From Phallusia mammillata (taxonomy: Eukaryota): 64,000 nucleotides of DNA. Where the stretch lies: assembly GCA_965637545.1 (NCBI GenBank), contig OZ281494.1, positions 13,392,001 to 13,456,000 of the forward strand, written 5' to 3'. The stretch's first letter is position 1. Each line of letters opens with the position of its first letter. Below are positions 3,071-42,900 of this stretch, one piece after another. Position numbers and translations under genes: made by a program. The notes under the pieces were generated by a model, which saw only the letters and a program-made list of their open reading frames with translations, was not told the origin of the DNA and did no database searches.

Positions 3071-6696
<3,626 letters not shown>

Positions 6697-8611: not shown

Positions 8612-11627
<3,016 letters not shown>

Positions 11628-12894
11628 ACCGAAGTCTTTATTTTTTCATGTACCTATAACAGACGTTAACGACATTACACGGTTAAAGTAAGGAACGGTA
11701 ATTTGCTTTATGTAATGGTATTTTACAGCTCACAGGTAGGGGATTTCGGGACTAATTTAAAAAATCCTGCATTGGCACTTTCCAATCCTTTTCCGGGATG
11801 CTGAATAAAATATGTACATTTTAAGTTGTTGTTTTTCCATCTTAACGACATTGTCGCGGAATGTGCGTTGAGTTAAACGCGAATTTTGGTGAGGTGAAAG
11901 CATATTTAAAGAAAATTTGATTGTTCTTTCGGTTTAAATTGTCGTTTAGTTTGAAACGTCCAGTTTAATTTTCTTGTGGGTGCGCAAACCAACTAGCGAT
12001 TTATTGAAAGTTTGTTGACATAAACACCAATACAATACCGTTTTTGTACTATTTTACGAAAACACATCTTCATACCCTAGTTTAATACGTGTCGGAAGTA
12101 CGCACAAATTTCAGCATTATGTTTTATTTTCAACGATAAAACGTCGCCTAGTTTATGCAAGGTTTTCCCTAACTTAACGAAGCCCTACAGAGTGTTATTG
12201 GATTTACTGCAATCCCGGGATTTCAGCAAAAATAATCCCGGGATCGGGATTCAGAAAAAAGCCTCTTACAGTAGGCTAATGATTGCAATCCTGACATTTT
12301 CCAATGTGTTGCAACTTTTTATTTTTACAACTGCTGCACAATTGACGTTTTGCAGAAATATAAAACAAATTGTAGCAATAAAAATTTTCGGTAAGGAATC
12401 CCAACAGCACAATGATATAAATGTCATCTTCACACTAATTCGTAGCTTTGAAAAAAGGGTAGCAAAGCAGTAAGTAGTTTGCAAAAAGAACAACACTGCA
12501 TCTAAAATAAATAACCTTTTTACCTTAATTAACTGATAGCCTACCTTCAATCAATGCAACTAGCAAGGATTAATACACACCTCACAAAAGTATCTATGTC
12601 TAAATAATACTAGCTTGCAGTTGTTGTGAACAGGGAAACAAATGTTACTAACGAAACAGAGTTCAGCACGCAGCTAAACGTTTCCTGATCGTGACCCGCC
12701 TCATCTCAAACATGTCATGGATTTACCAACGTCATTGCGTTTGCTGTCAATCTATTCCGATGTCGTTGCTGTTAAACAATGTTTTAATTCATTGTAAAAC
12801 GTTTGCTGAGACAAAGAAAGGACTTCTGAGGTCTTGTTCATATCCGAATTTTAAAAGGTCAAAACTAACTGAAAAAAATATATGTTTCCTATTT

Positions 12895-15359: not shown

Positions 15360-19058
<3,699 letters not shown>

Positions 19059-20967: not shown

Positions 20968-23667
20968 TTATGCACATCGGGTCATGATTTTTGAGAAAAC
21001 AAGCTGGGTGGCGTTGTCGAATGTTCCCCAGTAAAAGTACCGATTAGGAGGTGATGGTGTGTAATTTCCGTTCAAAGGTGTATGGGAACAACTGTTAAAC
21101 CACCAACCGCCTGTGCGACGGGATGCAGCACCACAATTTACGTGTCTGTAAAAAAATCGGTGGTTAGGTTTAACAAAATGGTTTTAATCGCAGCCCGGTG
21201 AAATGTATTTTTAACAAGTTACTTAAAACTCGCAAACTTTCTTGAATCTTCTTCACTTACAATGCTAAGTCATGATCTTGGTCACGTGTAGTAAAACGTT
21301 GGTTGTTGATAACTGTAAATGACGCCAATCCATTCATCGCATTACCAGCAGTCCCTGAATACCCGTCAACGCAGAGACGATATTTATCAGTGGCTGCACC
21401 AACGGAAAAATTGCTGTCAAATAAGCACCTTTTTATTATTATTTTAAAAGAAATAAAACCATTAAAAAAGATGTTATTTCAATACCAACATATAATCATT
21501 GCCACAGAGTATAAATATAGTTCGATAAAATCAGAAGCGTGTTCGAATACAACATAGCAATGATATATAGTAGGGTAAACTATCGCCACCAGAATAAAGG
21601 CGTAATGCTTGTTGTGCTTCAGTAAGTATAACACACCTGTAAACAGCGTAACCAGATATATTGTTCAGACTTTTAAGCTCCACCTGAAGTTTGCATTGGG
21701 AACAAGTGTAAGCTTTGGTCGCTTGATAAAGGTTTTCAAGACCTAATCCAAAAAAACACCAGTTTTAAACATTCAAATACGACTTTAACATTTTCAATAC
21801 CCACCCCACCAAAATTCCCCTGTTGTGCTACCAAATCCTTGTGTGTAATTTGTCCAGTATTGTTCGAAATCAACACTTCCATCATACCGACGTTGGAATA
21901 CCTGAAACACAACATTTGTCCGTTTCCTTGTTTTTTTGAATAATAGTTATAACCAATAAACACATCACGCTGCAAGCAACGATGGGCCCTAATTCAGTGT
22001 AAAAAGTATTGAAAATGAGCACTCAGACTTCTAAAAGTATCATTAGAATCTATAAACCGAATTTTGAAATGTCAAAAGAAACCGTAAAGTTTGTATGTTC
22101 ACTTCTTTTTTACCACGCCCAACTTACCAGCCACCCCTTGTTGCAAACAACGTTAGTTCCTGACTTTAACTGGTAATTTCCTGTCCAGTTTCCAGTCCAA
22201 CAGTTGGTGAAAACTAAGGGAAAAAATGCACTTTACAATACGAGTTTTAATTCAACGGCCTAGTTTGTTAAAGACCATTTTAAGCAATCGTGGTAAAATT
22301 GTAATACGCGTATATTCTACTACAAGCACTTTACTAACTAAAATTGTCCATGTTAACCTTCATGGCGCTTTCATTTGACGAGATTTCAAACCCACCAAAT
22401 CATGTAAAGCCATTTAAAGCCATTTAAGGCTTTTGCGAGTTAGTTAGGTTTTGTTTGTTTTTCCGTGCATTTCTACGTACCCGTTTGACAATATTTTCCA
22501 GCAAATCCTGCCGGACATTTGCAGGTGTAACTTGGATCCCCTGGTATGCAAGTGCTGTTGTTCTTACAAAGACTGTTCTTACATTGGTTAAAGTCTGAAA
22601 TAAGCCCAAAAATGCATAATGTGTTATGTTGATTATGGCACGGTTGATTATCGTTAATTTTTTTAGATTTACTATTAAAAAAAACGGAGAAGCAAATAAA
22701 GGCAGCAAACAAAGGGCTATATATGCAGCTATACGTGTAGCCATCAGCCAGGTTTACCACCTCCTGCAGGATGTTCGAGGCTTTGATCAATGGTAAATAC
22801 GAGATACCCAGGAACTGCCAATGTGCTTTTTCTGCGTACGTATTAATTACCGAGTGTTTTTTACAGCTGCTGTTCAAGCAAGACATTAGTCTTTAGCACG
22901 TAGAGATCTATGTGACGGAATGTACGTACATGTTTCACATCTTGCACCAGTGTAGTTTGCTTTACATGTACAGTAGAACCCATTGATGGCATCTACACAG
23001 GTTCCGTTATTCTTGCAAGCATTTGCCACACAGTCGTTCACCGCTGTAAGAGCACAAACATGCTAATGCTAAATCATTCCATTCTTTGATTTGGCACAAA
23101 ACAAGCTCTAAAACAGTGCGTCGGTCGGTAAAATTTGTGAATGGGACCTGTTGTGTTAGTGTAAACTGTAAACGGATAGGAACAAACAGATGATAATCTA
23201 TTTAGAGTTGTTACTGTGGATATGGTTTAAACCTGTGCATGAAACAAGCGACTTTTTATGCACCTCAATTCAAATTATCTTACTATTAGCGGCTCCTGGA
23301 CTGCAGGATTGACCAGCTTTTGCTGACGGTTCGGATCTGGTGTAATGAAAATATGTTGTCTGGTTTTCTGTGCAAAAAATATACAACCTTGAGAATGCAT
23401 TCTGTAGTTTTACAACTAGGTGCCCGAATAGTAGGTTTATTTGTAAAGTCTTTTTGTTTATAACAAGGCATAAAAAAGTTGTCAATGTACATTTGATGAA
23501 ACTCCATAAAATGTGATGAACTTAAATTGTGATGTCATCATAAAAACATTCTCTTTTTGTCAAAAAATAGATGCTTTTGCTAAAATAGGCAAAATGTTTT
23601 AATGCCGCTCACCTGCTTGGTTGCATAAAGAGCACAGATAAATCGCTACAAAAATCGCCTTGTTCAT
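20968..23667 (-). CDS. Secreted EGF-EGF-fibrinogen C-terminal domain (FReD) protein, copy 1 (344 aa)
   Basis: Exons 23667-23613 (signal peptide [18 protein letters not shown]), 23415-23284, 23043-22930 ([13 protein letters not shown]), 22594-22481 (EGF), 22213-22128, 21901-21805 ([12 protein letters not shown]...GFG...GEFWWG), 21742-21637 (LENL), 21413-21261 (YSGTAGNAM...FTTRDQDHD), 21145-20968 (NCG...GGWWFNSC...LNGNY) total 1035 nt, open. The exon-2 acceptor is the least certain junction. Confidence 0.88.
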
Positions 23668-24277
23668 TTCTCTACTTTATTATTATACTGGTGCTTTGTG
23701 CAATATTATGTAAGTTATAATGCACTGCGTGATGTGTCTCTACCGTCAATTATACAAACATCCGTCTGGCTGCAAAACAATAGCTTATATATTAATGGAT
23801 GTCCTCTCTATGCTTTTGTAACATCCTTTAGTTTTTCCAATGCGAAAATCACAAGCGTACGATCGCGGATTGTGAACCTTACTTATAGAAACAGCGCTGT
23901 TTTGCGGTTCCATACGATATTTTTTTAAATTTTAAACATCACATTTTAAAGGATTACTATTTGCGATATTTGCAAACAAACTTTTTGATTAGTTGCAAAA
24001 TAAGTTATAATTCATTTTATGCCAAAGGTTTAAACCTGATCCCAAACTTTGTTTATACTTCCTGGATAGGTGATGTACGCACAGACGATGCTAAGCATAC
24101 TCACAAATCAAAACCTACGCACGTTTAAAATCGTGCAACAGGGTATCGTAAATTGACATATATTTTCAAGAGATTTGACAAAAATTTAGTAAAAAAGGCA
24201 CATTTTATACCATGAGATTAGGGTAAAAAAATAACACAATGTGGCTGAATCAAAATTTTTGAACACTCTCTTTAGAG

Positions 24278-24758
24278 CAGTGGTTCCCAACCTTTTTACG
24301 ATCCCGTACCACTTGGACGCTCTGCACTGCCGCGCGTACCACCATAGAGCACTATTGGTACCACTTCTTACAGGACAACTAATTTGTTCGAAACATCTTT
24401 TATTCAACACTAGCTTAAGCTACAAAACAGTAGATGATATCTATCAAAAGCAATCATTTGACATAATTAACGCCCACTGTCCCACAGCGTTATACGGCTT
24501 TTCATAAAGCAACTATGCTTTTTGTTGAGAATTGACATGACCTGTATTTTGAAGATCGTAATGATACGAAACAACAGGAATAGTTACGTAACAATGACAA
24601 TAGGCCTGGAGAATGTTTTTTTGTAAACAAAACCAGATAAACAAAATATAAAATTACAAATCGAGGTTTTTGTGAACAAAACAGAAGCTACTCGCGTACC
24701 ACCTGAAAACCCTTTGCGTACCACTAGTGGTACGCGTACCACAGGTTGGGAACCCCTG
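24278..24758. mobile_element. hAT MITE (GTACC-motif family), unit 1
   Basis: CAGTGGTTCCCAACCT...AGGTTGGGAACCCCTG, TSD CTTTAGAG (24270-24277, 24759-24766). Confidence 0.92.
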
Positions 24759-24873
24759 CTTTAGAGGTATGCAAGTTGAGAAGTAATAACTCAGGTACTT
24801 CATGTAAATTAGAAACACAAGAAATACTGCTTTTCGCCACCACTGTTGCCAAACACACTTTATACTCAAAAAT

Positions 24874-24964
24874 TTATACACATCGGGTCATAATTTTTGA
24901 AGAAACAAGAGTGTTAGCGTTGTCTAATGTTGCCCAGTAAAAGTATTGATTGGGAGGTGATGGT
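24874..24964 (-). pseudogene. Orphan 3' tip (91 bp) of the copy-4-type last FReD exon; repeated at 30399-30489
   Basis: Nearly identical to 36757-36847 (...SSKIMTRCV stop) and cut at the tandem junction. Confidence 0.85.
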
Positions 24965-26495
24965 TCTAACACATCTATAAACAAGACATAATTTAAATAT
25001 AAAATAAAACTCTGAAACGAATGTCAAACATCACGGATTTTTAGAGATATGCAAAGTTGCAGTTAATGCTTTTGGATCACTTTTATGTGCATCGAAGCAT
25101 TAGAAATTCGACGTGTCAAGTCCTAACAATTCTACGTAACAAGCACAACAATGAAACGTGTCATCTTCAAGCTGATTTGCAGCTTAGCAAATAAAGTAGC
25201 AAAGCAGTATTTTTCATCAAAAGTCACATTTTCAGCTTACTTATCTGATAACCTACATTTACAACCAACAGAACTAACAAGGATTATTATTACAGTACAT
25301 ATCCTACAACAGCATCTATGTCTAAATAATACTTGTTTGCAATCGTTCTGGACTGAGAAACAAATGGTACTGAAAAAATACAATTTAACAGCCTTACGTC
25401 AGGCATCAACGCACATGATTGAGCATAACGGTTTAGATGGCATTTTTCAGATCGTGACGCGCTTAATCTTAACGCGTCTGGATTTCAACTTCATGCCAAC
25501 ATCAGTGCGTACACAAGTCGTGGTTGGTTAACAATTAAAACACTTCAACTAAATACTGCTATTCCTGCTTGCGTTCCTGTGACGTTTACATGCATTGATT
25601 CACTTGCTCACGTTTGCCTAATTACCATTTTAAATTTAACTAAATTTTGACTAGAGGTAAAATAGAAACATCTATGAAACATTTCGGACGAATATGCATA
25701 CTTTGTAATCTCGCCCTTAATAACAGCAACACCCAAGTGCACTTTTGCAAAACAAGTTTCTCTTTAGCGTGCAATTTAGGCATAACATAAATGGCAATAT
25801 TGGGGCTGCAGTGTTTACTACATAGCAGAACGGATGAAGGGCTTTGTTGACTTATTAAAGGAAACTTTGTTAAGCTAGTGTCCTGCGCTTCCAGCTTTAG
25901 TTGGAAAGTACCGTCGTTTAAAGTCTGACAACTGCTGCATCTTTGGCTAAATAGCAAATGCTGACGTGTCGGATCCTACAAGGTGTAACTCCCAAAGAAA
26001 GCAATTCCCTGTCGCTCACCAAATGGAAGCGCGTTGTGAAAAGGAATGTCAAAAAGCGACAGAATCTACAATCATACACTGAAACCACCACTGCTATAAA
26101 GTATGCGCATAGTATCCAGAAGATCTAACATATTAGCCAGTATACTTTCTGTATAAATGATGTACGCACAGACGATTGCAAACACAGTCACAAATCGAAG
26201 CCTATACGCACGTTTAAATTCGTGCAACACAGTATTTTAAACAGATATACACTTTAAAGAGATCTGAGAAGAGTTGAGCAAAAATACGCAATGTATACCT
26301 ATAAGATTAAGGTATACATTCAAAATGAATATAATGTGGGTAAATTGAAATGTTTTCCACGCTATTCAAAGTCATACAAGTTGAGAAGTAATAGCTCAGG
26401 CACTTCATGTATGTTAGAACACTACTGTATTTTTGTAAACACTGTAATTTGTACAGCAACTTTATTGTGGCTGAACACATTTTGTAACCAAAGTT

Positions 26496-29192
26496 TTATG
26501 CACATCGGGTCATGATTTTTGAGAAAACAAGCTGGGTGGCGTTGTCGAATGTTCCCCAGTAAAAGTACCGATTAGGAGGTGGTGGTGTGTAATTTCCGTT
26601 CAAAGGTGTATGGGAACAACTGTTAAACCACCAACCGCCTGTGCGACGGGATGCAGCACCACAATTTACGTGTCTGTAAAAAAATCGGTGGTTAGGTTTA
26701 ACAAAATGGTTTTAATCGCAGCCCGGTGAAATGTATTTTTAACAAGTTACTTAAAACTCGCAAACTTTCTTGAATCTTCTTCACTTACAATGCTAAGTCA
26801 TGATCTTGGTCACGTGTAGTAAAACGTTGGTTGTTGATAACTGTAAATGACGCCAATCCATTCATCGCATTACCAGCAGTCCCTGAATACCCGTCAACGC
26901 AGAGACGATATTTATCAGTGGCTGCACCAACGGAAAAATTGCTGTCAAATAAGCACCTCATGGTTATTATTTTAAAAGAAATAAAACCATTAAAAAAGAT
27001 GTTATTTCAATACCAACATATAATCATTGCCACAGAGTATAAATATAGTTCGATAAAATCAGAAGCGTGTTCGAATACAACATAGCAATGATATATAGTA
27101 GGGTAAACTATCGCCACCAGAATAAAGGCGTAATGCTTGTTGTGCTTCAGTAAGTATAACACACCTGTAAACAGCGTAACCAGATATATTGTTCAGACTT
27201 TTAAGCTCCACCTGAAGTTTGCATTGGGAACAAGTGTAAGCTTTGGTCGCTTGATAAAGGTTTTCAAGACCTAATCCAAAAAAACACCAGTTTTAAACAT
27301 TCAAATACGACTTTAACATTTTCAATACCCACCCCACCAAAATTCCCCTGTTGTGCTACCAAATCCTTGTGTGTAATTTGTCCAGTATTGTTCGAAATCA
27401 ACACTTCCATCATACCGACGTTGGAATACCTGAAACACAACATTTGTCCGTTTCCTTGTTTTTTTGAATAATAGTTATAACCAATAAACACATCACGCTG
27501 CAAGCAACGATGGGCCCTAATTCAGTGTAAAAAGTATTGAAAATGAGCACTCAGACTTCTAAAAGTATCATTAGAATCTATAAACCGAATTTTGAAACAA
27601 AAGAAACCGTAAAGTTTGTATGTTCACTTCTTTTTTACCACGCCCAACTTACCAGCCACCCCTTGTTGCAAACAACGTTAGTTCCTGACTTTAACTGGTA
27701 ATTTCCTGTCCAGTTTCCAGTCCAACAGTTGGTGAAAACTAAGGGAAAAAATGCACTTTACAATACGAGTTTTAATTCAACGGCCTAGTTTGTTAAAGAC
27801 CATTTTAAGCAATCGTGGTAAAATTGTAATACGCGTATATTCTACTACAAGCACTTTACTAACTAAAATTGTCCATGTTAACCTTCATGGCGCTTTCATT
27901 TGACGAGATTTCAAACCCACCAAATCATGTAAAGCCATTTAAAGCCATTTAAGGCTTTTGCGAGTTAGTTAGGTTTTGTTTGTTTTTCCGTGCATTTCTA
28001 CGTACCCGTTTGACAATATTTTCCAGCAAATCCTGCCGGACATTTGCAGGTGTAACTTGGATCCCCTGGTATGCAAGTGCTGTTGTTCTTACAAAGACTG
28101 TTCTTACATTGGTTAAAGTCTGAAATAAGCCCAAAAATGCATAATGTGTTATGTTGATTATGGCACGGTTGATTATCGTTAATTTTTTTAGATTTACTAT
28201 TAAAAAAAACGGAGAAGCAAATAAAGGCAGCAAACAAAGGGCTATATATGCAGCTATACGTGTAGCCATCAGCCAGGTTTACCACCTCCTGCAGGATGTT
28301 CGAGGCTTTGATCAATGGTAAATACGAGATACCCAGGAACTGCCAATGTGCTTTTTCTGCGTACGTATTAATTACCGAGTGTTTTTTACAGCTGCTGTTC
28401 AAGCAAGACATTAGTCTTTAGCACGTAGAGATCTATGTGACGGAATGTACGTACATGTTTCACATCTTGCACCAGTGTAGTTTGCTTTACATGTACAGTA
28501 GAACCCATTGATGGCATCTACACAGGTTCCGTTATTCTTGCAAGCATTTGCCACACAGTCGTTCACCGCTGTAAGAGCACAAACATGCTAATGCTAAATC
28601 ATTCCATTCTTTGATTTGGCACAAAACAAGCTCTAAAACAGTGCGTCGGTCGGTAAAATTTGTGAATGGGACCTGTTGTGTTAGTGTAAACTGTAAACGG
28701 ATAGGAACAAACAGATGATAATCTATTTAGAGTTGTTACTGTGGATATGGTTTAAACCTGTGCATGAAACAAGCGACTTTTTATGCACCTCAATTCAAAT
28801 TATCTTACTATTAGCGGCTCCTGGACTGCAGGATTGACCAGCTTTTGCTGACGGTTCGGATCTGGTGTAATGAAAATATGTTGTCTGGTTTTCTGTGCAA
28901 AAAATATACAACCTTGAGAATGCATTCTGTAGTTTTACAACTAGGTGCCCGAATAGTAGGTTTATTTGTAAAGTCTTTTTGTTTATAACAAGGCATAAAA
29001 AAGTTGTCAATGTACATTTGATGAAACTCCATAAAATGTGATGAACTTAAATTGTGATGTCATCATAAAAACATTCTCTTTTTGTCAAAAAATAGATGCT
29101 TTTGCTAAAATAGGCAAAATGTTTTAATGCCGCTCACCTGCTTGGTTGCATAAAGAGCACAGATAAATCGCTACAAAAATCGCCTTGTTCAT
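26496..29192 (-). CDS. EGF-EGF-FReD protein, copy 2
   Basis: Near-identical to copy 1 at +5528/+5525; ATG 29192, TAA 26498-26496. No exonic disruption noticed. Confidence 0.85.
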
Positions 29193-29802
29193 TTCTCTAC
29201 TTTATTATTATACTGGTGCTTTGTGCAATATTATGTAAGTTATAATGCACTGCGTGATGTGTCTCTACCGTCAATTATACAAACATCCGTCTGGCTGCAA
29301 AACAATAGCTTATATATTAATGGATGTCCTCTCTATGCTTTTGTAACATCCTTTAGTTTTTCCAATGCGAAAATCACAAGCGTACGATCGCGGATTGTGA
29401 ACCTTACTTATAGAAACAGCGCTGTTTTGCGGTTCCATACGATATTTTTTTAAATTTTAAACATCACATTTTAAAGGATTACTATTTGCGATATTTGCAA
29501 ACAAACTTTTTGATTAGTTGCAAAATAAGTTATAATTCATTTTATGCCAAAGGTTTAAACCTGATCCCAAACTTTGTTTATACTTCCTGGATAGGTGATG
29601 TACGCACAGACGATGCTAAGCATACTCACAAATCAAAACCTACGCACGTTTAAAATCGTGCAACAGGGTATCGTAAATTGACATATATTTTCAAGAGATT
29701 TGACAAAAATTTAGTAAAAAAGGCACATTTTATACCATGAGATTAGGGTAAAAAAATAACACAATGTGGCTGAATCAAAATTTTTGAACACTCTCTTTAG
29801 AG

Positions 29803-30283
29803 CAGTGGTTCCCAACCTTTTTACGATCCCGTACCACTTGGACGCTCTGCACTGCCGCGCGTACCACCATAGAGCACTATTGGTACCACTTCTTACAGGA
29901 CAACTAATTTGTTCGAAACATCTTTTATTCAACACTAGCTTAAGCTACAAAACAGTAGATGATATCTATCAAAAGCAATCATTTGACATAATTAACGCCC
30001 ACTGTCCCACAGCGTTATACGGCTTTTCATAAAGCAACTATGCTTTTTGTTGAGAATTGACATGACCTGTATTTTGAAGATCGTAATGATACGAAACAAC
30101 AGGAATAGTTACGTAACAATGACAATAGGCCTGGAGAATGTTTTTTTGTAAACAAAACCAGATAAACAAAATATAAAATTACAAATCGAGGTTTTTGTGA
30201 ACAAAACAGAAGCTACTCGCGTACCACCTGAAAACCCTTTGCGTACCACTAGTGGTACACGTACCACAGGTTGGGAACCCCTG
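29803..30283. mobile_element. hAT MITE, unit 2 (duplicate of 24278-24758)
   Basis: Same termini and CTTTAGAG TSD. Confidence 0.92.
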
Positions 30284-31946
30284 CTTTAGAGGTATGCAAG
30301 TTGAGAAGTAATAACTCAGGTACTTCATGTAAATTAGAAACACAAGAAATACTGCTTTTCGCCACCACTGTTGCCAAACACACTTTATACTCAAAAATTT
30401 ATACACATCGGGTCATAATTTTTGAAGAAACAAGAGTGTTAGCGTTGTCTAATGTTGCCCAGTAAAAGTATTGATTGGGAGGTGATGGTTCTAACACATC
30501 TATAAACAAGACATAATTTAAATATAAAATAAAACTCTGAAACGAATGTCAAACATCACGGATTTTTAGAGATATGCAAAGTTGCAGTTAATGCTTTTGG
30601 ATCACTTTTATGTGCATCGAAGCATTAGAAATTCGACGTGTCAAGTCCTAACAATTCTACGTAACAAGCACAACAATGAAACGTGTCATCTTCAAGCTGA
30701 TTTGCAGCTTAGCAAATAAAGTAGCAAAGCAGTATTTTTCATCAAAAGTCACATTTTCAGCTTACTTATCTGATAACCTACATTTACAACCAACAGAACT
30801 AACAAGGATTATTATTACAGTACATATCCTACAACAGCATCTATGTCTAAATAATACTTGTTTGCAATCGTTTTGGACTGAGAAACAAATGGTACTGAAA
30901 AAATACAATTTAACAGCCTTACGTCAGGCATCAACGCACATGATTGAGCATAACGGTTTAGATGGCATTTTTCAGATCGTGACGCGCTTAATCTTAACGC
31001 GTCTGGATTTCAACTTCATGCCAACATCAGTGCGTACACAAGTCGTGGTTGGTTAACAATTAAAACACTTCAACTAAATACTGCTATTCCTGCTTGCGTT
31101 CCTGTGACGTTTACATGCATTGATTCACTTGCTCACGTTTGCCTAATTACCATTTTAAATTTAACTAAATTTTGACTAGAGGTAAAATAGAAACATCTAT
31201 GAAACATTTCGGACGAATATGCATACTTTGTAATCTCGCCCTTAATAACAGCAACACCCAAGTGCACTTTTGCAAAACAAGTTTCTCTTTAGCGTGCAAT
31301 TTAGGCATAACATAAATGGCAATATTGGGGCTGCAGTGTTTACTACATAGCAGAACGGATGAAGGGCTTTGTTGACTTATTAAAGGAAACTTTGTTAAGC
31401 TAGTGTCCTGCGCTTCCAGCTTTAGTTGGAAAGTACCGTCGTTTAAAGTCTGACAACTGCTGCATCTTTGGCTAAATAGCAAATGCTGACGTGTCGGATC
31501 CTACAAGGTGTAACTCCCAAAGAAAGCAATTCCCTGTCGCTCACCAAATGGAAGCGCGTTGTGAAAAGGAATGTCAAAAAGCGACAGAATCTACAATCAT
31601 ACACTGAAACCACCACTGCTATAAAGTATGCGCATAGTATCCAGAAGATCTAACATATTAGCCAGTATACTTTCTGTATAAATGATGTACGCACAGACGA
31701 TTGCAAACACAGTCACAAATCGAAGCCTATACGCACGTTTAAATTCGTGCAACACAGTATTTTAAACAGATATACACTTTAAAGAGATCTGAGAAGAGTT
31801 GAGCAAAAATACGCAATGTATACCTATAAGATTAAGGTATACATTCAAAATGAATATAATGTGGGTAAATTGAAATGTTTTCCACGCTATTCAAAGTCAT
31901 ACAAGTTGAGAAGTAATAGCTCAGGCACTTCATGTATGTTAGAACA

Positions 31947-34722
31947 CTACTGTATTTTTGTAAACACTGTAATTTGTACAGCAACTTTATTGTGGCTGAA
32001 CACATTTTGTAACCAAAGTTTTATGCACATCGGGTCATGATTTTTGAGAAAACAAGAGTTGTCGAATGTTCCCCAGTAAAAGTACTGATTAGGAGGTGAT
32101 GGTATGTAATTTCCGTTCAAAGGTGTATGGGAACAACTGTTAAACCACCAACCGCCTGTGCGACGGGATGCAGCACCACAATTTACGTGTCTGTAAAAAA
32201 ATCGGTGGTTAGGTTTAACAAAATGGTTTTAATCGCAGCCCGGTGAAATGTATTTTTAACAAGTTACTTAAAACTCGCAAACTTTCTTGAATCTTCTTCA
32301 CTTACAAAGCTAAGTCATGATCTTGGTCACGTGTAGTAAAACGTTGGTTGTTGATAACTGTAAATGACGCCAATCCATTCATCGCATTACCAGCAGTCCC
32401 TGAATACCCGTCAACGCAGAGACGATATTTATCAGTGGCTGCACCAACGGAAAAATTGCTGTCAAATAAGCACCTCATGGTTATTATTTTAAAAGAAATA
32501 AAACCATTAAAAAAGATGTTATTTCAATACCAACATATAATCATTGCCACAGAGTATAAATATAGTTCGATAAAATCAGAAGCGTGTTCGAATACAACAT
32601 AGCAATGATATATAGTAGGGTAAACTATCGCCACCAGAATAAAGGCGTAATGCTTGTTGTGCTTCAGTAAGTATAACACACCTGTAAACAGCGTAACCAG
32701 ATATATTGTTCAGACTTTTAAGCTCCACCTGAAGTTTGCATTGGGAACAAGTGTAAGCTTTGGTCGCTTGATAAAGGTTTTCAAGACCTAATCCAAAAAA
32801 ACACCAGTTTTAAACATTCAAATACGACTTTAACATTTTCAATACCCACCCCACCAAAATTCCCCTGTTGTGCTACCAAATCCTTGTGTGTAATTTGTCC
32901 AGTATTGTTCGAAATCAACACTTCCATCATACCGACGTTGGAATACCTGAAACACAACATTTGTCCGTTTCTTTGTTTTTTTGAATAATAGTTATAACCA
33001 ATAAACACATCACGCTGCAAGCAACGATGGGCCCTAATTCAGTGTAAAAAGTATTGAAAATGAGCACTCAGACTTCTAAAAGTATCATTAGAATCTATAA
33101 ACCGAATTTTGAAATGTCAAAAGAAACCGTAAAGTTTGTATGTTCACTTCTTTTTTACCACGCCCAACTTACCAGCCACCCCTTGTTGCAAACAACGTTA
33201 GTTCCTGACTTTAACTGGTAATTTCCTGTCCAGTTTCCAGTCCAACAGTTGGTGAAAACTAAGGGAAAAAATGCACTTTACAATACGAGTTTTAATTCAA
33301 CGGCCTAGTTTGTTAAAGACCATTTTAAGCAATCGTGGTAAAATTGTAATACGCGTATATTCTACTACAAGCACTTTACTAACTAAAATTGTCCATGTTA
33401 ACCTTCATGGCGCTTTCATTTGACGAGATTTCAAACCCACCAAATCATGTAAAGCCATTTAAAGCCATTTAAGGCTTTTGCGAGTTAGTTAGGTTTTGTT
33501 TGTTTTTCCGTGCATTTCTACGTACCCGTTTGACAATATTTTCCAGCAAATCCTGCCGGACATTTGCAGGTGTAACTTGGATCCCCTGGTATGCAAGTGC
33601 TGTTGTTCTTACAAAGACTGTTCTTACATTGGTTAAAGTCTGAAATAAGCCCAAAAATGCATAATGTGTTATGTTGATTATGGCACGGTTGATTATCGTT
33701 AATTTTTTTAGATTTACTATTAAAAAAAACGGAGAAGCAAATAAAGGCAGCAAACAAAGGGCTATATATGCAGCTATACGTGTAGCCATCAGCCAGGTTT
33801 ACCACCTCCTGCAGGATGTTCGAGGCTTTGATCAATGGTAAATACGAGATACCCAGGAACTGCCAATGTGCTTTTTCTGCGTACGTATTAATTACCGAGT
33901 GTTTTTTACAGCTGCTGTTCAAGCAAGACATTAGTCTTTAGCACGTAGAGATCTATGTGACGGAATGTACGTACATGTTTCACATCTTGCACCAGTGTAG
34001 TTTGCTTTACATGTACAGTAGAACCCATTGATGGCATCTACACAGGTTCCGTTATTCTTGCAAGCATTTGCCACACAGTCGTTCACCGCTGTAAGAGCAC
34101 AAACATGCTAATGCTAAATCATTCCATTCTTTGATTTGGCACAAAACAAGCTCTAAAACAGTGCGTCGGTCGGTAAAATTTGTGAATGGGACCTGTTGTG
34201 TTAGTGTAAACTGTAAACGGATAGGAACAAACAGATGATAATCTATTTAGAGTTGTTACTGTGGATATGGTTTAAACCTGTGCATGAAACAAGCGACTTT
34301 TTATGCACCTCAATTCAAATTATCTTACTATTAGCGGCTCCTGGACTGCAGGATTGACCAGCTTTTGCTGACGGTTCGGATCTGGTGTAATGAAAATATG
34401 TTGTCTGGTTTTCTGTGCAAAAAATATACAACCTTGAGAATGCATTCTGTAATTTTACAACTAGTTGTAAATACGTGCCCGAATAGTAGGTTTATTTGTA
34501 AAGTCTTTTTGTTTATAACAAGGCATAAAAAAGTTGTCAATGTACATTTGATGAAACTCCATAAAATGTGATGAACTTAAATTGTGATGTCATCATAAAA
34601 ACATTCTCTTTTTGTCAAAAAATAGATGCTTTTGCTAAAATAGGCAAAATGTTTTAATGCCGCTCACCTGCTTGGTTGCATAAAGAGCACAGATAAATCG
34701 CTACAAAAATCGCCTTGTTCAT
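31947..34722 (-). CDS. EGF-EGF-FReD protein, copy 3, with a frameshifted C-terminus
   Basis: ATG 34722. The last exon (start 32190) carries an 8-nt deletion (AACAAGAGTTGTC) that replaces the last 14 aa with 36 new residues ending at TAG 31949-31947. May be non-functional. Confidence 0.78.
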
Positions 34723-35545
34723 TTCTCTACTTTATTATTATACTGGTGCTTTGTGCAATGTTATGTAAGTTATAATGCACTGCGTGTTGTGTCTCTACCG
34801 TTGCAAAACAATAGCTTATAAGTTATATTAATGGATGTCCTCTCTATGGTTTTGTAACATCCTTTAGTTTTTCCAATGCGAAAATCACAAGTGTACGATC
34901 GCGGATTGTGAACCTTACTTATAGAAACAGCGCTGTTTTGCGGTTCCATACGATATGTTTTAAAATTTTAAACATCACATTTTAAAGGATTACTATTTGC
35001 GATATTTGCAAACAAACTTTTTGATTAGTTGCAAAATAAGTTATAATTCATTTTATGCCAAACCTGATCACAAACTTTGTTTCGTATACTTCCTGAATAG
35101 GTGATGTACGCACAGACGATGCTAAGCATACTCACAAATCAAAACCTACGCACGTTTAAAATCGTGCAACAGGGTATCGTAAATTGACATATATTTTCAA
35201 GAGATTTGACAAAAATTAGTAAAAAAGGCACATTTTATACCATGAGATTAGGGTAAAAAAATAATACAATGTGGCTGAATTAAAATTTTTGAACACTCTC
35301 TTTAGAGCAGTGGTTCTCAAACTTTTTTGACCGCGACCCAAATCTGAGTATTATGACCCAAGCCTCAAACATCAAAAAATGTAACAATTTCGAGGCCACG
35401 TGGTGGCCGCACTGGAGTCTGCCCACGAGTTCGATTCGACAATACTACATAACACAACACACATTATGGCTTTGCAGCACCATGATTATTGATAGACGCT
35501 AACTGTTACATCAAGTTTAAAGAGCTCTTCTGGCAAATGTGATTT

Positions 35546-35597
35546 TTATTCCGACGTTTCGACGTCCTATACAGGTCGTCTTCATCAGGGTAAATAA
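35546..35597 (-). ncRNA. Minimal type-I hammerhead ribozyme in the Penelope-like 3' region
   Basis: Minus strand UUAUUUACC-CUGAUGA-A-GACGACCUGUAUAGGACGUC-GAAAC-GUC|GGAAUAA: both core boxes, a pairable stem II, a short palindromic stem III, and a stem I with a 2-nt bulge. Confidence 0.72.
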
Positions 35598-36032
35598 CAC
35601 TGAATGCGACTAGTACAGTGCACGATAAACAAAGGAAAAAAAGGAAAAAATAGTAGAACGCAAGCACGTAACAACGCAACGAAAACACCGCCCGATAACA
35701 AATGATTGACCCTCTAATCTTTAAGCAGGTGCCTGTAGCACGCTGGAAGCATCACGTCTGTTTTGATGTTCATTGTGTTGACCCGTTGGTGAATATTCCA
35801 TGACTCAAGAAATAGTCTTTTCCTGTAGTCAGGCTCCCGGGCCACAACAGAAGCCGCATTGAAATCAATACGGTGGCCTTGTGATACCGCGTGATTGGAC
35901 AGGGCCGACTTCTTTGCGTCGCTGTTGGCAACATCCCGCCGATGTTCTTTTCGGCGGGTGTTGAGTGACCTTCCTGTCTCCCCGATATATATTAACGGAC
36001 AATCGGCGCAGGGAATAGAATATACAACACCA

Positions 36033-36314
36033 CGTTGTTCAAGGGTGTCGATTGGATCTTTCGGGTGACTCAGTAGCTTGCGGAGAGTATTGGCAGGTTG
36101 AACGCCAACCGCTACGCCGAAGTCACGCAACATACGCCGTAGAATATCCGTCAATTTCGGTATGTTTTGTGACACTTCCGTACATACCGAAATTGACGGA
36201 TATTCTACGGCGTATGTTGCGTGACTTCGGTGTAGCGGTTGGCGTTCAACCTGCCAATACTCTCCGCAAGCTACTGAGTCACCCGAAAGATCCAATCGAC
36301 ACCCTTGAACAACG
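36033..36314. repeat. Fold-back inverted repeat: 133-bp arms (36033-36165, 36182-36314) with a 16-nt spacer
   Basis: Arms are reverse complements with one mismatch noticed, which explains the mirrored ORFs 35714..36295(-) and 36052..36366(+). Confidence 0.92.
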
Positions 36315-37760
36315 CTTATATATTGAGCTAACTGTTACATCTCCACGTTCAGTTTTGCATGATTAGCTTTTATTCCCCGTGCTATGACGTAACAATCGCC
36401 ATGTGCGTAACAGTACAATTGGAAGGCTATTGTCAGTATTTTGCAATGATTAGTTCATTTCACTGTACAACGTGGTCGAGTGAGTGGACTTTACTACTAC
36501 TACTACATTAGGTAAATTCGTTTGTGTTTACTTAATGTAGTAATAGTTCGTTTGGGTAGAATTGACCCACCATAGCGCGACCCATTTTTTGACCCTGCGC
36601 GACCCACGTTTGGGTCGCGACCCATACTTTGAGAACCACTGCTTTAGAGGTATGCAAGTTGAGAAGTAATAACTCAGGTACTTCATGTAAATTAGAAACA
36701 CAAGAAATACTGCTTTTCGCCACCACTGTTGCCAAACACACTTTATACTCAAAAATTTATACACATCGGGTCATAATTTTTGAAGAAACAAGAGAGTTAG
36801 CGTTGTCTAATGTTGCCCAGTAAAAGTATTGATTGGGAGGTGATGGTGTGTAATATCCGTTCAAAGGTGTATGGGAACAACCGTTAAACCACCAACCGCC
36901 TGTGTGACGAGATGCAGCAGCACAATTTACGTACCTGTAAAATGATGCTAAATACCAAATGCGTTACTTTCAGTTCTTTTAAACGAGCTTTACAAGGTTA
37001 GATTCTAAAGCAGGGGTGTCCAACCCGTGGCCCGCAGAAAGGTTTTGAGTAGCCCGCGTGGTATTTGTTGAAATAACTTTTATTATTAACCTAATTACCT
37101 ACGTAATTTATGGCGAACTTTCATTCAAATTGGCATTCATTGTTTGCTTTATTTCTTTATTAATGGAGTAATACACAACTGTTCAAGTTACCTTTATTAC
37201 ATCGTAATACACATTGTTACGCATCACAATTTCTACATTGTTGCGTCCACAATTTAACTCGTGTTTTAGGAGTCAGTCAGAAATATTCCTTGCCTTTTTA
37301 AGGTCCACCAGATAATAATCAGAGACCCGCGCAAAACGCGTTTAGCAGTGAAATATCTTCAGCACTCTGCAGTGATACAGATCAGTGGTTCCCAACCTTT
37401 TTTTGACGCGACCCAAATACTTCCCAAATTGTTGTATTGTGATGTCCCGCGACCCATGGACTTACTATTTCGGTTATATTTTTGTCTCTATTTTGTATTT
37501 TTGTATTCTTACTATTTCGGTTGTATTTTTGCCTCTAAATCAGAAAAGCTTTCGAAAATTATTACGCCAGTTTGGAAAATTTAAAAATCAAACAAATACT
37601 ATTCAAAACATTTCCATTTAGCCCGAACTTTGGAGCTATCTCAAAGCATTATCAGCCAATACGACGTCACAAACAGAATTAACCATTATTACGCCAAGTT
37701 GTCTTGAAATTATTTTTGGGCAACAATTTAAAACAGTTTGTTACATCATAGACAAAATAA

Positions 37761-39988
37761 TTTAACGCGCCTTTTCAGTTCGGTCTAGACCTGCAGTTAA
37801 CAGTTGTTGCAAAGTTTATTCACAGTATAAAATCGGGCATATAAAAGTCGACGGGTAAAACACCTCTGCCCGTCATCACCACCAACCACGACTACCACGT
37901 GGATTCCCTGCCACGTCGAGTATCGCCACTTACAGAAAGCACACTGGGGGCGCCACAGAGCACATGTGACGTAATAATTATGTAACACACTCCCCCTACC
38001 ACATAAAATAGAGTGTCCACACTCAATACGACATACCACGAAAACGCATATGACAGCACAGAACGTACGACGTTACGCCACCAGTTTTTACACCAAATCG
38101 CTCTTAAACAAATTAAAGCAATAACTGCATGCGGGCACAAAATAAATAAACATACGACGTGATAAGTGCTTGTGGAACGCATTATTAATTAAATTAAGGC
38201 CCAGAATCAAATACAAGGAACTGGAGTCAGTGAACAATCGTGAAAACATTGTTGTGCAAATAAAAAACACAATAAACTAGCAGTAAATTAACAACAAAAC
38301 ACAGGAAAAACAGTTAAACAAAAACAAGACACAACGCAAAGATTCTATAAGTCTGATTTGAATGACAACAAAAAAAGTGAAATTAAGTGAAACAAAACAC
38401 AAAAACATAACAAACGAATCTATTAGGTCACGGCGGCGGAGTAAAATGGTCTATGATGAACAATACTCGGTGGTCGTATATTAACGCGCTCCACAAACTG
38501 TGGAATATGTTTTCGTGGTGCAAAGTTTGCACCCAGTGATAGAAAACCGTCGGCATTCTTGTTTGCCTCTTCCCATAGATCGTCGGCTTTCTCGTGGACA
38601 CTTTGTTGACAAAATTCACCCCATTTCGGTTCAGGGTTCTTCAAAAGCACAGCACATGTTTTTCTCAACCCTCTCTTAACATGCACACTAGGGACAAAAT
38701 TAGACGTACCCGTGCACCCGTTCCTTTGTGCAAGATATGGAGCTTCGGTAAAGCGATTGCGAGAAACTTTAGCAACATTTACACAACGCGGTAACACTTC
38801 AAGGTTGCCGCCAGAGTTTCCAACTTTTTCTCGTTTGTGGCCGCCTTTGACTGAAGCAACCATGCTTGCGGAACAAATCCTGTCCTTATTGACAACGACT
38901 CGGGTACCTGCGGCACACCCGCCTCTTCTAGTGCGTTCCAATTTTCGTTGGACAGAACATACAGCCGTGCTCTGCAGAGGTGTAGTTGGTTCAGGGTTAT
39001 ATACGTCCCCACAATTTGCTCGATTGTGGCCCTTTTTTCCACAGTGAAGGCACAAGGGTTTGTTATTCTGACAGTTCTTGTCGAAACCAACCTTATCTTT
39101 CAAGTCTTGAAGTTCGTGACGCAGTTCTTCAATCATTTCAAGCAGCACAGCTTGGTTTAAGAAAGATTGGTTGGCTGACATCGCACATATGCCCATATTA
39201 GCTGGACTTTCTGCAAAACACTCCGATTGCAAAACAATTTTACAAGCAGATGAAAAAGAAGGGCTCTCCAGACAAGAGTTTTCCCTTATTATTTTATCGG
39301 CTAAAAAACGATTTTTTAAACCGTTGGTCAGCACCAAAAAACACATTTCATTTCTCAGATTATCGTCATCCGGATATGACCCAACCGGAAAAGCTCCATA
39401 ATAAACATTCTGTCTGTTTCTTCCACTTTCTGGGTCCTTGCTACCAGGTCTTGTTTGGCCTTGTTCCTGAACACATTGCCGCCGGTCACTTTAATTCCAA
39501 GTGCCTTCAGGTCTTTGTAATCAGCCATGTACAAGTCACTGCCGCTTGCTTGCTTCATGTCAAAAATCACATCTTCCGGCAAGCTTGCTAAAAGCGCGTG
39601 GCGCTTGGCCGCTTCGTTAGCATCCACGCTTTGGCAAAAGCTTTCAAAACTTGCCAGAAAATGTACAAAGTTGCCCCCTTTGTCAAAGCGCGGTGGTGGA
39701 TAGTAAAAAGTCATACTGACGGATTAAAATGTTTAAAAAAAGGCATAAAAAATCTTCTCCCTGCAACAACTGAAGCAGGTCCTGGCGTGCTCGCCAATTT
39801 TGTAACGCGCCTTTTCAGTTCGGTCTAGACCTGCAGTTAACGGTTGTTGCAAAGTTTATTCACAGTATAAAATCGGGCATATAAAAGTCGACGGGTAAAA
39901 CACCTCTGCCCGTCATCACCACCAACCACGACTACCACGTGGATTCCCTGCCACGTCGAGTATCGCCACTTACAGAAAGCACACTGGG
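37761..39988 (-). mobile_element. Non-autonomous gag-only LTR retroelement (Ty3/Gypsy-like)
   Basis: Direct repeats 37761-37948 and 39801-39988 (two mismatches seen). 5' LTR ends ...GCGTTACA followed by PBS-like TGGCGAGCACGCCAGGAC (39796-39779). PPT GGTAGGGGGAG (38000-37990) precedes TG at 37989. No pol sequence. Confidence 0.85.
38423..39714 (-). pseudogene. Gag-like ORF split by one frameshift near 39370
   Basis: Capsid-like FLASFESFC...KRHALLASL...LVARTQKVEET..FIMELFRLG, then the zinc knuckle CLHCGKKGHNRANC (CX2CX4HX4C). No protease D(S/T)G seen. Confidence 0.8.
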
Positions 39989-42900
39989 TATTACGATTTA
40001 TGCGCAAACAATACCCTTCTTTTGTTGAAAACAATGGGTCAATAAAGGAGAGGAGAATCCTATACATTCTTGCTGTCGAGATCACAAAAAGCACAATCAA
40101 TCGTCAGTAAAAATATATATTCAAATAGCGGCACGTTTAAGCTGATGCGCGCCTTGTCCCTGGTGTTTGTCTGCAAGACGAATAAAATCTGCTTGTACGA
40201 TAAAGTTAGCTGAGTTTCACAGTTCTTGTAAGCTTGTATCGCCCCCAACTTTAAAAACTGTCACCATCAAACCCTCGTTGGACGAAATACCCATCGTTGA
40301 AGAACCCTGATTTAGCCTTGGGAAATTAAAAAATAACGCTATGAAACGAAGTCAAAGAGTAAATCCTCTTATGTCACAAAAAACAGGCGACCCAACAGAA
40401 TCTTCAGGCGACCCAACTTTGGGTCGCGACCCATAGGTTGGGAACCACTGATATAGATGATGCCAAACCGAAAAGCTAGTAACGCCAACAGAGTATTACA
40501 AGATAGGTGGACACGTGACTTCAAATCCCCTGTAAGATCAGTAATTTCTGACAACCATATGGAAAACTCGCTTCACATTGTTACATCGTCCATCTCACCG
40601 AATATTGCCAAACTTGTAAGAGAAAAAGAGTGCCATACTTTACATTGAAATGTCGACGTGTGGTAAAAACTTTGGGAACTTTACTACATCTTGGTATGTT
40701 TATTGTTCTTAGATTTGTAAACGAGGAGATTAGAATTGCGGTGTGAGGATTTTAATTATGAAACGGCCATTTGTAAGATTATAAATTAGCAATTTTTTTT
40801 GTACAAAGTTGTAAGGACTTTAACTTACGTCACGTTTAAAAGTTTTCGGTTTGATACGATGGTTTTAATAGCAGCACCGTGTAACACGGGTTATTTTTAA
40901 TACTTTTCCTAAAACAAAAGTTCTCATGTATTTTTCACTTACCCAACTGAGTCATTATCTTGGTCACGTGTACTGAACTGTTGATTGTTGATAACTGTAA
41001 ATGACACCAATCCAGTCATCGCATTACCAGCAGTCCCTGAATACCCACCAACGCAGAGACGATATTTATCAGTCGCCGCACCAACGGAAAATTTGCTATG
41101 AAATAAGCACCTCATGGTTATTATTTAAAAAAAAAACAAAAAAAAAACATAACCATTAAAACATGTTTTATTTCCGTACAAACATATACTCATTGCCACA
41201 ATGTTTAAATATAGTTCGGTGAAAGTCAAAACCGTGTGCAAATTCAATATAGCAATGATTCAGAGTATAGGGTAAACTATCGCCACGAAAATTAGGCCTA
41301 ATGCTTGTTGTGCTTCAGTAAGTATAACACACCTGTAAACAGCGTAACCAGATATATTGTTCAGACTTTTGAGTTCCACCCGAAGTTTGCATTGGGAACA
41401 ATAGTAAGCTTTGGTCCCTTGATAAAGGTTTTCAAGATCTAATCCAAAAGAAACAGTTTTAAACATTTAAATACGGCTTTAAAATTTAAATACTTATTAA
41501 AAGGTCGTGTTTTATTAAAAAAAGTTTGACACCCACCCCACCAAAATTCCCCTGCTGTGCTACCAAATCCTTGGGTGTAATTTGTCCAGTATTGTTCAAA
41601 ATCAACACTTCCGTCATACCGACGTTGGAACACCTAAACACAACATTTGTCCGTTTCCTTGTTTTTGAATAACAGATATTACCAATAAACACACCATGCT
41701 GCAAGCAACAATAAGCCCTAATTTCGTGTAAAAAATGTTAAAATTGAGCACTCAGACTTAAAAAGGAATTGTTGGAATCTTCAATCTGAATCTTGAAATT
41801 TTAAAAGAAACCGTAAATTTTGTGTGTTCACTATTTTTTTACCACGCCCAACTTACAAACCATCCCCTGTTGCAAACAACGTTAGTTCCTGACTTCAGCT
41901 GGTAATTTCCTGTCCAGTTTCCACTCCAACAGTTGGTGAAAACTAAGGAGAAATGCACATTACAAGTATGAATTATAAACCAAAATGACCAATTTGTGTT
42001 AAAGACCATTTTAAGCAATCGTGGTAAATTTGTAACACTCGTATATTTCACTGCAAGCACTAACAAAACTGTACACGAAAACCTTTTTGTCGCTCTCATT
42101 TTACGAGATATCAAACTATGTAAAGCTATTTGAGGCATTTACAAGTTGTTTGGTTTGGTTTGTTTTTCCAAAACTTTTACCCGTTTGACAATATTTCCCA
42201 GCAAATCCTGCCGGACAAAGACTGTTCTTACATTGGTTAAAGTCTGAAATAAGCCAAAAAATGCATAATGTGCTATGCTAAAAGTGGCACGATTGATTAT
42301 CGTTAAATTTTTTGATTTTATAAGTTTTTCAAAGACTGGGAAATAAAAACAAAAAGGAAAATGCAAATGAACAGATCCGTATATAGTGTTCCAAAATGCA
42401 AATGGTTATACATGCAGCTACGTGTAGCCATCAGCCAGGTTTACCACCTCCTACAGGATGTTCGTGGCCTTAATCAGTGGTAAATTCGAAATACCCAGAA
42501 ACTGCCAATGTGCTTTTTCTGCGTACGTATTAATTACCGAGAGTTTTTTTGCGGCTGCTGTTTAAGCAAGATACTAGTCCGTAGCACACAGAGATCTATG
42601 CAACGAAATGTACGTACATGTTTCACATCTTACACCAGTGTAGTTTGCTTTACATGTGCAGTAGAACCCATTGATGGCATCTATACATGTTCCGTTATTC
42701 TTGCAAGCATTTGGCACACAGTCGTTTACCGCTGTAAGAGCACAAACATGTCAATGCTAAATTATTCCATTCTTTGATTTAACACAAAACAAGCTCTGAA
42801 ACAGTGCGTCGATCGAGAATTCGCGTCCAAGCTAAATATATTTATAAAACTAAAAATACCTTGGCAAAACTAAACTGTCGAATTACCAACCAAAAATTAT

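What the first reader, a model, noticed from the sequence alone, without database searches (positions are those of the whole stretch)
24270..36649. Two different hAT MITEs occupy exactly the same 8-bp target in paralogous units
Units 1 and 2 carry a 481-bp element (CAGTGGTTCCCAACC, GTACC motifs). Unit 3 carries a different ~505-bp element (CAGTGGTTCTCAAA, GGGTCGCGACCC motifs). Both are flanked by the same CTTTAGAG duplication in the same context (GAACACTCT...GTATGCAAG), ~115 nt past the copy-4-type stop codon. The paralogous position near 20835 is empty. Explanations include independent insertions at a strong hotspot in two haplotypes, or element replacement by excision and gap repair from a non-allelic MITE.
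Basis: partly seen in the sequence, partly recalled or inferred. Interest (0 to 1): 0.7.

Follow-up and report, generated by a model that had tools for sequence, protein, structure and literature searches.

The report
Two jumping-gene families, one target site
Two related but distinct small hAT transposons occupy the same 8-base target in neighbouring copies of a duplicated gene segment, most likely because that target closely matches what their transposase prefers; this is a known kind of insertion hotspot, not a new mechanism.

Summary
A three-unit tandem array spans 19436-36846 with a period of about 5.5 kb. Units 1 and 2 carry a 481-bp MITE; the two copies differ by 1 nt. Unit 3 carries a different element at the same CTTTAGAG duplication with identical flanks. 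As assembled it is 1,334 bp: a 505-bp MITE interrupted by an 829-bp Penelope-like insert.

The two MITEs share only the 14-15-nt terminal repeat and the subterminal layout. Their interiors are unrelated. Both families are abundant in this genome, and all 53 sampled copies have 8-bp duplications of the form nnnTAnnn, which is the Buster-type hAT pattern.

The focal site scores about 470 times the average position under the joint target motif. It ranks 21st of 63,500 positions in the window. The shared 20-nt end has 4,436 exact copies genome-wide, so a second hit at such a site is expected about 1% of the time. Separately, seven places in the genome show two such elements separated by exactly one 8-bp nnnTAnnn.

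Best reading: independent insertions at a preferred target. The same thing is called "parallel insertion sites" for carrot Stowaway MITEs. A route through an already occupied site is not excluded. The assembly could not be checked with reads. A first-stage note elsewhere in this genome reports a similar pile-up.

The parts
19436..24963 (.). Tandem unit 1 (5,528 bp). It holds a minus-strand EGF-EGF-fibrinogen_C gene and a truncated 3' end of the neighbouring gene type.
   Evidence: Self-BLAST, junction reading, Pfam hits
24964..30488 (.). Tandem unit 2. It is 0.12% diverged from unit 1.
30489..36846 (.). Tandem unit 3. It is 0.4-0.46% diverged from units 1 and 2 overall. In the last 877 bp before the MITE site it shows 1.25% substitutions plus 7 indels. 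Its right end runs into the intact last exon of the next gene.
24270..24277 (+). Left target-site duplication CTTTAGAG, unit 1. The right copy is at 24759-24766.
24278..24758 (+). Family-A hAT MITE, 481 bp. The subterminal motif is GTACCAC, with a palindrome near the 3' end. The 5' terminal repeat has T at position 4, seen in none of 26 other sampled family copies.
29803..30283 (+). Family-A MITE copy in unit 2, 1 nt different from the unit-1 copy. Its duplications are at 29795-29802 and 30284-30291.
35300..35307 (+). Left target-site duplication CTTTAGAG, unit 3. The right copy is at 36642-36649.
35308..36641 (+). Family-B hAT MITE. The 505-bp core is 35308-35512 plus 36342-36641, with subterminal CGCGACCCA motifs, and it is interrupted by a nested insert. 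The closest relative is on another chromosome, 1.2% diverged.
35513..36341 (-). Nested Penelope-like fragment, 829 bp including one copy of its 15-bp duplication (35498-35512 = 36327-36341). It has a minus-strand ORF with a weak GIY-YIG match and a 133-nt inverted repeat.
36757..36759 (-). Stop codon of the fibrinogen-related gene whose 3' UTR holds the site. It lies 115 nt from the element's edge.
   Evidence: compare
20828..20845 (.). Old intra-unit paralogue of the site (73-75% identity); it is empty.
37383..40450 (+). Another element of the same end type, 740 bp from the site. It has family-B-like subterminal motifs, the family-A-like end CAGTGGTTCCCAACC and the duplication ATACAGAT/ATATAGAT. 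It carries a nested LTR-like insert.
4625..5086 (+). A third related MITE family, 462 bp, with a perfect duplication TTTTAGAT.

Best explanation
Two non-autonomous hAT transposons of sister families inserted independently into the same 8-bp target in two paralogous copies of a 3'-UTR segment. They have the same terminal repeat type and the same Buster-type target rule, so probably the same or closely related transposases. The order inferred is as follows. A non-homologous tandem duplication first made two copies of the site. The family-A element then entered the left copy and the family-B element entered the right copy, which is the one attached to the intact gene. The left unit, already carrying its MITE, then duplicated again by unequal exchange. 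Later a Penelope-like element landed inside the family-B copy. The coincidence arises because the site nearly matches the palindromic 14-bp target preference of these elements. Shown here: the anatomy, the family identities, the target motif, the strength of the site, and genome-wide re-use of single targets. Inferred: the order of events, and that the site was empty when each element arrived.
For: 1. The unit tree is ((U1,U2),U3). U1-U2 divergence is 0.12% and the two family-A copies differ by 1 of 481 nt. U3 differs by 0.4-0.46% overall, and by 1.25% plus 7 indels in the 877 bp next to the site (Fisher p = 3e-5). The unit-3 copy of the site has therefore had its own history.
2. Both unit junctions are identical and show no homology at the breakpoints.
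3. All 53 sampled insertions of the two families have 8-bp duplications with a central TA, and both families share one palindromic motif, W-Y-C-n-T-n-TA-n-A-n-G-R-W.
4. The focal site has about 470 times the mean weight. It ranks 21 of 63,500 positions in the window and 3 of about 5,000 in the unit. It falls at the 77th percentile of occupied sites in a leave-one-out test.
5. The shared 20-nt end has 4,436 exact copies in the genome against 0 for the control. That gives about 0.9% expected second hits at such a site.
6. There are 31 places genome-wide where two outward-facing ends lie 0-30 nt apart. Seven of them are at exactly 8 nt of the form nnnTAnnn (Poisson p about 8e-5), and they include mixed end types.
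7. Insertions are young relative to the elements themselves. 50 of 56 duplications are perfect although copies lie 2-5% from their family majority (p = 2e-4 and 6e-5). An old family-A copy could therefore have moved in recently by cut-and-paste.
8. Precedent: 1.6% of carrot Stowaway sites are 'parallel insertion sites', mostly holding two families with similar termini (PMC6881990). P elements also hit the same nucleotides repeatedly (PMC1592238).
Against: The sequence-only model gives only about 1% for a second hit at this site, so the case is expected only because the whole genome was scanned. The family-A copy is 3.8% from its family majority and has no relative closer than 4.7%, so it could have been resident before the duplication. 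Its 5' end carries T at position 4, like family B and unlike 26 other family-A copies. That hints at some exchange between elements at this site. The assembly of the near-identical units was not checked with reads.
Confidence: 0.66

Rival explanations
1. Occupied-site route. The family-A element was already at the site before the first duplication, so all units inherited it. In unit 3 the family-B element inserted into the regenerated 8-bp duplication beside it, giving a tandem pair. The family-A copy was then lost precisely, for example by deletion between the 17-nt direct repeat CTTTAGAG+CAGTGGTTC. Alternatively it was replaced in one step, as in P-element targeted transposition.
For: Tandem re-use of one 8-bp target is seen at seven places in this genome. 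The family-A copy looks older than the unit split: it is 3.8% from its family majority, while the flanks differ by about 1.2%. Its unusual T at position 4 lengthens the direct repeat shared with the family-B left end from 11 to 17 nt. For P elements, targeting to a resident element gave 32 tandem insertions and 2 precise replacements out of 34 (PMC3887531).
Against: It needs an extra, exact deletion that leaves no footprint, and the flanks in unit 3 are identical to those of units 1 and 2. hAT excision removes the whole element and leaves hairpinned flanks, so the end homology that drives P-element replacement is absent (established hAT chemistry, my own knowledge). Perfect duplications and conserved ends show that element age overstates insertion age in these families.
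Confidence: 0.17
2. Assembly or haplotype artefact. Unit 3 is really the other allele of unit 1 or 2, placed in tandem by the assembler. The two MITEs would then be allelic alternatives at one locus and not paralogues. It would still be a parallel insertion, but the framing and the inferred history would change.
For: The U3 versus U1/U2 divergence, 0.4% overall and about 5% including indels in the last 378 bp, is in the range of allelic divergence in highly heterozygous marine invertebrates (my own knowledge).
Against: The window has no gaps. Both internal junctions are identical, and the array ends cleanly inside an exon that then continues intact. A misplaced haplotig would not be expected to reproduce the non-homologous junction exactly.
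Confidence: 0.1
3. Gap-repair replacement. After excision, the break was repaired by copying a non-allelic MITE of the other family, using only end homology.
For: This mechanism is known for P elements (PMC3887531). The two families share 9 to 20 nt at their ends.
Against: The right ends share only the last 3 nt before they differ. hAT excision leaves no element sequence at the break. The closest family-B relative lies on another chromosome. A paralogous unit carrying the original element would be a far better repair template.
Confidence: 0.04

Closest known systems
Parallel insertion sites of Stowaway MITEs in carrot (PMC6881990)
   Same: Different MITE copies, mostly from two families with similar terminal sequences, sit at exactly the same position in homologous DNA. 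The sites are often near genes. The pattern is attributed to a shared transposase and to hotspots.
   Different: Those are Tc1/mariner-type MITEs with TA targets in a plant, compared between individuals. Here they are Buster-type hAT MITEs with an 8-bp target in an animal, compared between tandem paralogues within one assembly.
Buster-clade hAT elements and their MITEs (TcBuster; Mar in Drosophila; PMC3499496, PMC3517528)
   Same: They make 8-bp duplications with the consensus nnnTAnnn and have short terminal repeats beginning with CAG.
   Different: No autonomous partner was linked here, and the families themselves appear to be specific to this genome.
P-element hotspots and targeted transposition or replacement (PMC1592238, PMC3887531)
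   Same: The same nucleotide is hit repeatedly. Tandem insertions and precise replacement occur at a resident element that has the same ends.
   Different: This is a different superfamily with a different cleavage chemistry, and replacement is not demonstrated here.

Membership tests
hAT superfamily (non-autonomous members) | 8-bp target-site duplication | tested here: met
   50 of 56 sampled copies have perfect 8-bp duplications. The three focal copies are perfect.
hAT superfamily (non-autonomous members) | Short terminal inverted repeats beginning with CAG | tested here: met
   The repeats are 14-15 nt, of the form CAG(T/G)GGTTC(C/T)CAA(C/A)C, at both ends.
hAT superfamily (non-autonomous members) | An autonomous element with the same ends encoding a hAT transposase | not tested
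   The genome has at least 522 candidates for the hAT dimerisation domain, including intact ORFs of 600-895 aa.
Buster clade of hAT | Duplication consensus nnnTAnnn | tested here: met
   53 of 53 sampled sites have T at position 4 and A at position 5. The criterion comes from PMC3517528 and PMC3499496.
MITE | Short, non-coding, high copy number, with terminal repeats and a target duplication | tested here: met
   The elements are 481 and 505 bp. No coding-looking ORF was seen inside them; the one ORF of 80 aa or more overlapping the family-A copy, 24241-24507, starts in the flank. The first look found at least 960 and at least 484-665 candidates for the two families. The shared end has 4,436 exact copies.
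Parallel insertion site (as defined for carrot Stowaway) | Different elements at precisely the same position in homologous sequence | tested here: met
   The duplication and flanks are identical while the element interiors are unrelated. Here the homologous sequences are paralogous units, not alleles.
Parallel insertion site (as defined for carrot Stowaway) | The elements come from families with similar termini | tested here: met
   12 of 15 terminal positions are identical and the subterminal layout is the same.
Transposon replacement (P-element type) | The resident element is shown to have preceded the new one at the same site | not testable with these tools
   This needs population or outgroup alleles.
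Penelope-like element (the nested insert) | GIY-YIG endonuclease domain | tested here: inconclusive
   The Pfam GIY-YIG match has E = 0.00099 and 19.8 bits, below the 22.6-bit cut-off.
Penelope-like element (the nested insert) | Hammerhead ribozyme in the terminal repeat | tested here: not met
   No Rfam hammerhead family matched at E <= 0.1 in 35300-36700. A CUGAUGA...GAAAC motif is visible by eye on the minus strand near 35546-35597.

The most novel reading that the evidence does not exclude
hAT elements in this animal home to sites already occupied by a relative with the same ends. They first give tandem pairs that share one 8-bp duplication. They sometimes end in clean one-for-one replacement. 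That would be a hAT counterpart of P-element targeted transposition, caught here between paralogous units.
Probability: 0.12. Interest if true: 0.6.

Novelty: new member of a known kind. Interest (0 to 1): 0.3.

Why it matters
The case shows, in numbers, that target-sequence preference is enough to make two transposon families land on the same 8 bases. That is a caution for anyone who treats shared insertion sites as homoplasy-free markers of common descent. It also yields a 14-bp palindromic target motif for a large Buster-type MITE superfamily in this genome. The array is also a small natural record of duplication, insertion and gene conversion in a fibrinogen-related gene cluster. The phenomenon itself is already described for other transposon superfamilies.

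Tried and rejected
- One family with an internal rearrangement: rejected. The interiors do not align above shuffles, and each element groups with its own abundant family.
- The flanks being part of a larger repeat that attracts MITEs: rejected. The flanks occur only at this locus.
- Mutagenic break repair as the cause of the divergent tract left of the unit-3 element: judged implausible in size. An older history or a gene-conversion boundary fits better.
- A clean unequal-crossover model for the third unit: the variant patterns are mixed and do not fit it.
- Rfam search for the hammerhead: no hit. The only weak hits were microRNA-like matches caused by the 133-nt hairpin.
- Abutting ends in the loci already fetched: none found, so the genome-wide pattern search was used in its place.
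Full report
**What is there.** The window is a gap-free, 38% GC stretch of chromosome-scale contig C1 of a 240-Mb animal genome. A self-comparison shows three tandem units: 19436-24963, 24964-30488 and 30489-36846.

Each unit holds a minus-strand gene with EGF and fibrinogen C-terminal domains. The right end of each unit is the 3' end of the next gene of that family. In unit 3 this runs into an intact last exon ending at the stop codon 36757-36759. In units 1 and 2 only the last 27 codons remain, cut off by the unit junction. The two internal junctions are identical and show no homology between the breakpoints. The first duplication was therefore non-homologous, and the third unit arose later by exchange between units.

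**The observation.** The flank-plus-duplication strings occur exactly three times each, and never in shuffled sequence. Units 1 and 2 carry a 481-bp element, and the two copies differ by one base.

Unit 3 carries a 1,334-bp element between the same CTTTAGAG copies. It is a 505-bp MITE with an 829-bp insert at 35513-36341, bounded by a perfect 15-bp repeat. A 516-bp copy on another chromosome lacks the insert and runs straight across the insertion point.

The insert has a minus-strand ORF with a weak GIY-YIG match and a 133-nt inverted repeat. It is probably a Penelope-like fragment. Rfam found no hammerhead ribozyme in it.

The old intra-unit paralogue near 20835, at 73-75% identity, is empty. 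The flanks occur nowhere else in the genome.

**What the two elements are.**
- They share the first 20 nt apart from two positions.
- Their 3' subterminal regions have the same layout, a repeated motif followed by a palindrome: GTACCAC in one family and CGCGACCCA in the other.
- Their interiors do not align better than shuffles.
- They lie in the same orientation.

Each belongs to its own abundant family. The first look found at least 960 candidates for one and at least 484-665 for the other, and sampled copies are 74-99% identical to the focal ones.

From 56 sampled copies with flanks, 50 have perfect 8-bp duplications. All 53 used for the motif have T and A at positions 4 and 5. The pattern nnnTAnnn is the published mark of the Buster clade of hAT elements (PMC3517528; PMC3499496).

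The genome is rich in hAT transposase genes, some with intact ORFs.

The shared 20-nt end, allowing its three variable positions, has 4,436 exact copies in the genome and none in the control. Six of the eight possible end variants appear in the 100 listed matches. The window itself holds two more elements of this superfamily, at 4625-5086 and 37383-40450. Both have TA-centred duplications, the second with one mismatch that falls on the central T of its left copy.

**Why the same site.** Both families show one palindromic preference that extends three bases beyond the duplication on each side. I built a motif without the focal site. Under it, the focal site has about 470 times the mean weight. 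It ranks 21st of 63,500 positions in the window and third in its unit. In a leave-one-out test it lies at the 77th percentile of occupied sites. With at least 4,436 elements in 240 Mb, the expected number of further hits at such a site is about 0.009.

A separate test came from asking how often two ends of this type face each other across a short spacer. There are 31 such places with spacers of 0-30 nt. Seven of them have exactly 8 nt of the form nnnTAnnn, where about one per spacer length would be expected (Poisson p about 8e-5). One of the seven pairs a family-B-type end with a family-A-type end. A uniform model predicts about 0.1 such abutments. The seven observed imply an effective site weight of about 90 or more, which is of the same order as the motif estimate.

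Re-use of one 8-bp target by different families therefore happens in this genome at roughly the rate the sequence preference predicts. The same behaviour is published for carrot Stowaway MITEs: 1.6% of sites are "parallel insertion sites", mostly holding two families with similar termini (PMC6881990). It is also published for P elements in heat-shock promoters (PMC1592238).

**History.**
- Units 1 and 2 are sisters at 0.12% divergence. Unit 3 differs from them by 0.4-0.46%.
- The difference is uneven: 6 substitutions in the first 3,970 bp, against 11 substitutions plus 7 indels in the last 877 bp before the site (Fisher p = 3e-5). I read this as gene conversion of the gene body, with the site region keeping the older divergence.
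- The family-B copy is 1.2% from its nearest relative, which matches the flank divergence.
- The family-A copy is 3.8% from its family majority and 4.7% from its nearest relative. Taken alone, that would suggest it predates the duplication.
- Across both families, however, duplications and terminal repeats are far better preserved than the element bodies. The bodies are therefore older than the insertions, as expected for cut-and-paste movement.
- The timing therefore allows both elements to have arrived after the first duplication.

**What remains open.** The family-A copy has T at position 4 of its left end, like family B and unlike all 26 other sampled family-A copies. Together with the duplication, this makes a 17-nt direct repeat with the left end of the family-B element.

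One rival fits that detail: the family-B element entered the duplication beside a resident family-A copy in unit 3, and the family-A copy was then deleted. It also fits P-element targeted transposition, where both tandem and replacement outcomes are seen (PMC3887531). But it needs an extra, exact step. I give it about one chance in six.

Copy-in from a non-allelic MITE by gap repair is unlikely. hAT excision leaves no element sequence at the break, and the right ends share only three bases.

If unit 3 were a misplaced allele, the two insertions would be allelic and not paralogous. The main conclusion would stand.

**Earlier notes.** An unchecked first-stage note elsewhere in this genome (s1-403156) reports several hAT elements piled into one 8-bp site. 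My genome-wide abutment count agrees with the general claim, but I did not examine that locus.

**Verdict.** It is expected somewhere in a genome with thousands of these elements and a strong target motif. It is a well-documented example of a known phenomenon in a superfamily and an animal lineage where, to my knowledge, it has had little attention.

Noticed in passing
window 35513-36341: A Penelope-like fragment is nested in the family-B MITE. It has a perfect 15-bp duplication, a minus-strand ORF with a weak GIY-YIG match and a 133-nt, 99% complementary inverted repeat at 36033-36314. The weak microRNA-like Rfam hits come from this hairpin. No Rfam hammerhead matched, although a CUGAUGA...GAAAC motif is visible near 35546-35597 on the minus strand.
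   Followed up: partly
window 37383-40450: A 3,068-bp element with perfect 18-nt inverted ends of the same type holds an LTR-like insert. The insert has 193-nt direct repeats, 98% identical, at 37756-37948 and 39796-39988. It also has a minus-strand ORF with a CCHC zinc-knuckle motif but no Pfam hit.
   Followed up: partly
window 23400-24277 versus 34400-35307: Divergence between unit 3 and units 1 and 2 is about eight times higher in the last 877 bp before the MITE site than in the rest of the unit. This suggests gene conversion of the gene body or a different haplotype origin for that tract.
   Followed up: partly
window 24281 and 29806: The family-A copies here have T at position 4 of the left terminal repeat. 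All 26 other sampled family members have G at both ends. T is the family-B state.
   Followed up: partly
L009 (G000:C3:16910092-16910558) and L012 (G000:C7:18042538-18043032): Two family-A copies sit at the same TA of a short host repeat on different chromosomes. The homologous flanks are about 46 bp and the duplications are GTCTATGC and GCCTATGC. This is either another parallel insertion or a composite that moved as a unit.
   Followed up: partly
G000: C1:81912, C2:28617258, C4:406978, C6:14452397, C7:7170380, C8:9308229: Six places give identical scores to the hAT dimerisation domain, each inside an open frame of 660 aa. They look like a recently active autonomous hAT element, but their ends were not read.
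   Followed up: no
window 9052-11696, 15744-19126, 40859-43654: These are older, 78-90% identical paralogues of the fibrinogen-related gene. The three-unit array is therefore the youngest layer of a larger tandem gene family.
   Followed up: no
window 51660-57640: A long array of about 90-bp tandem repeats at 80-93% identity. It belongs to the mucin-like receptor gene covered by another finding.
   Followed up: no
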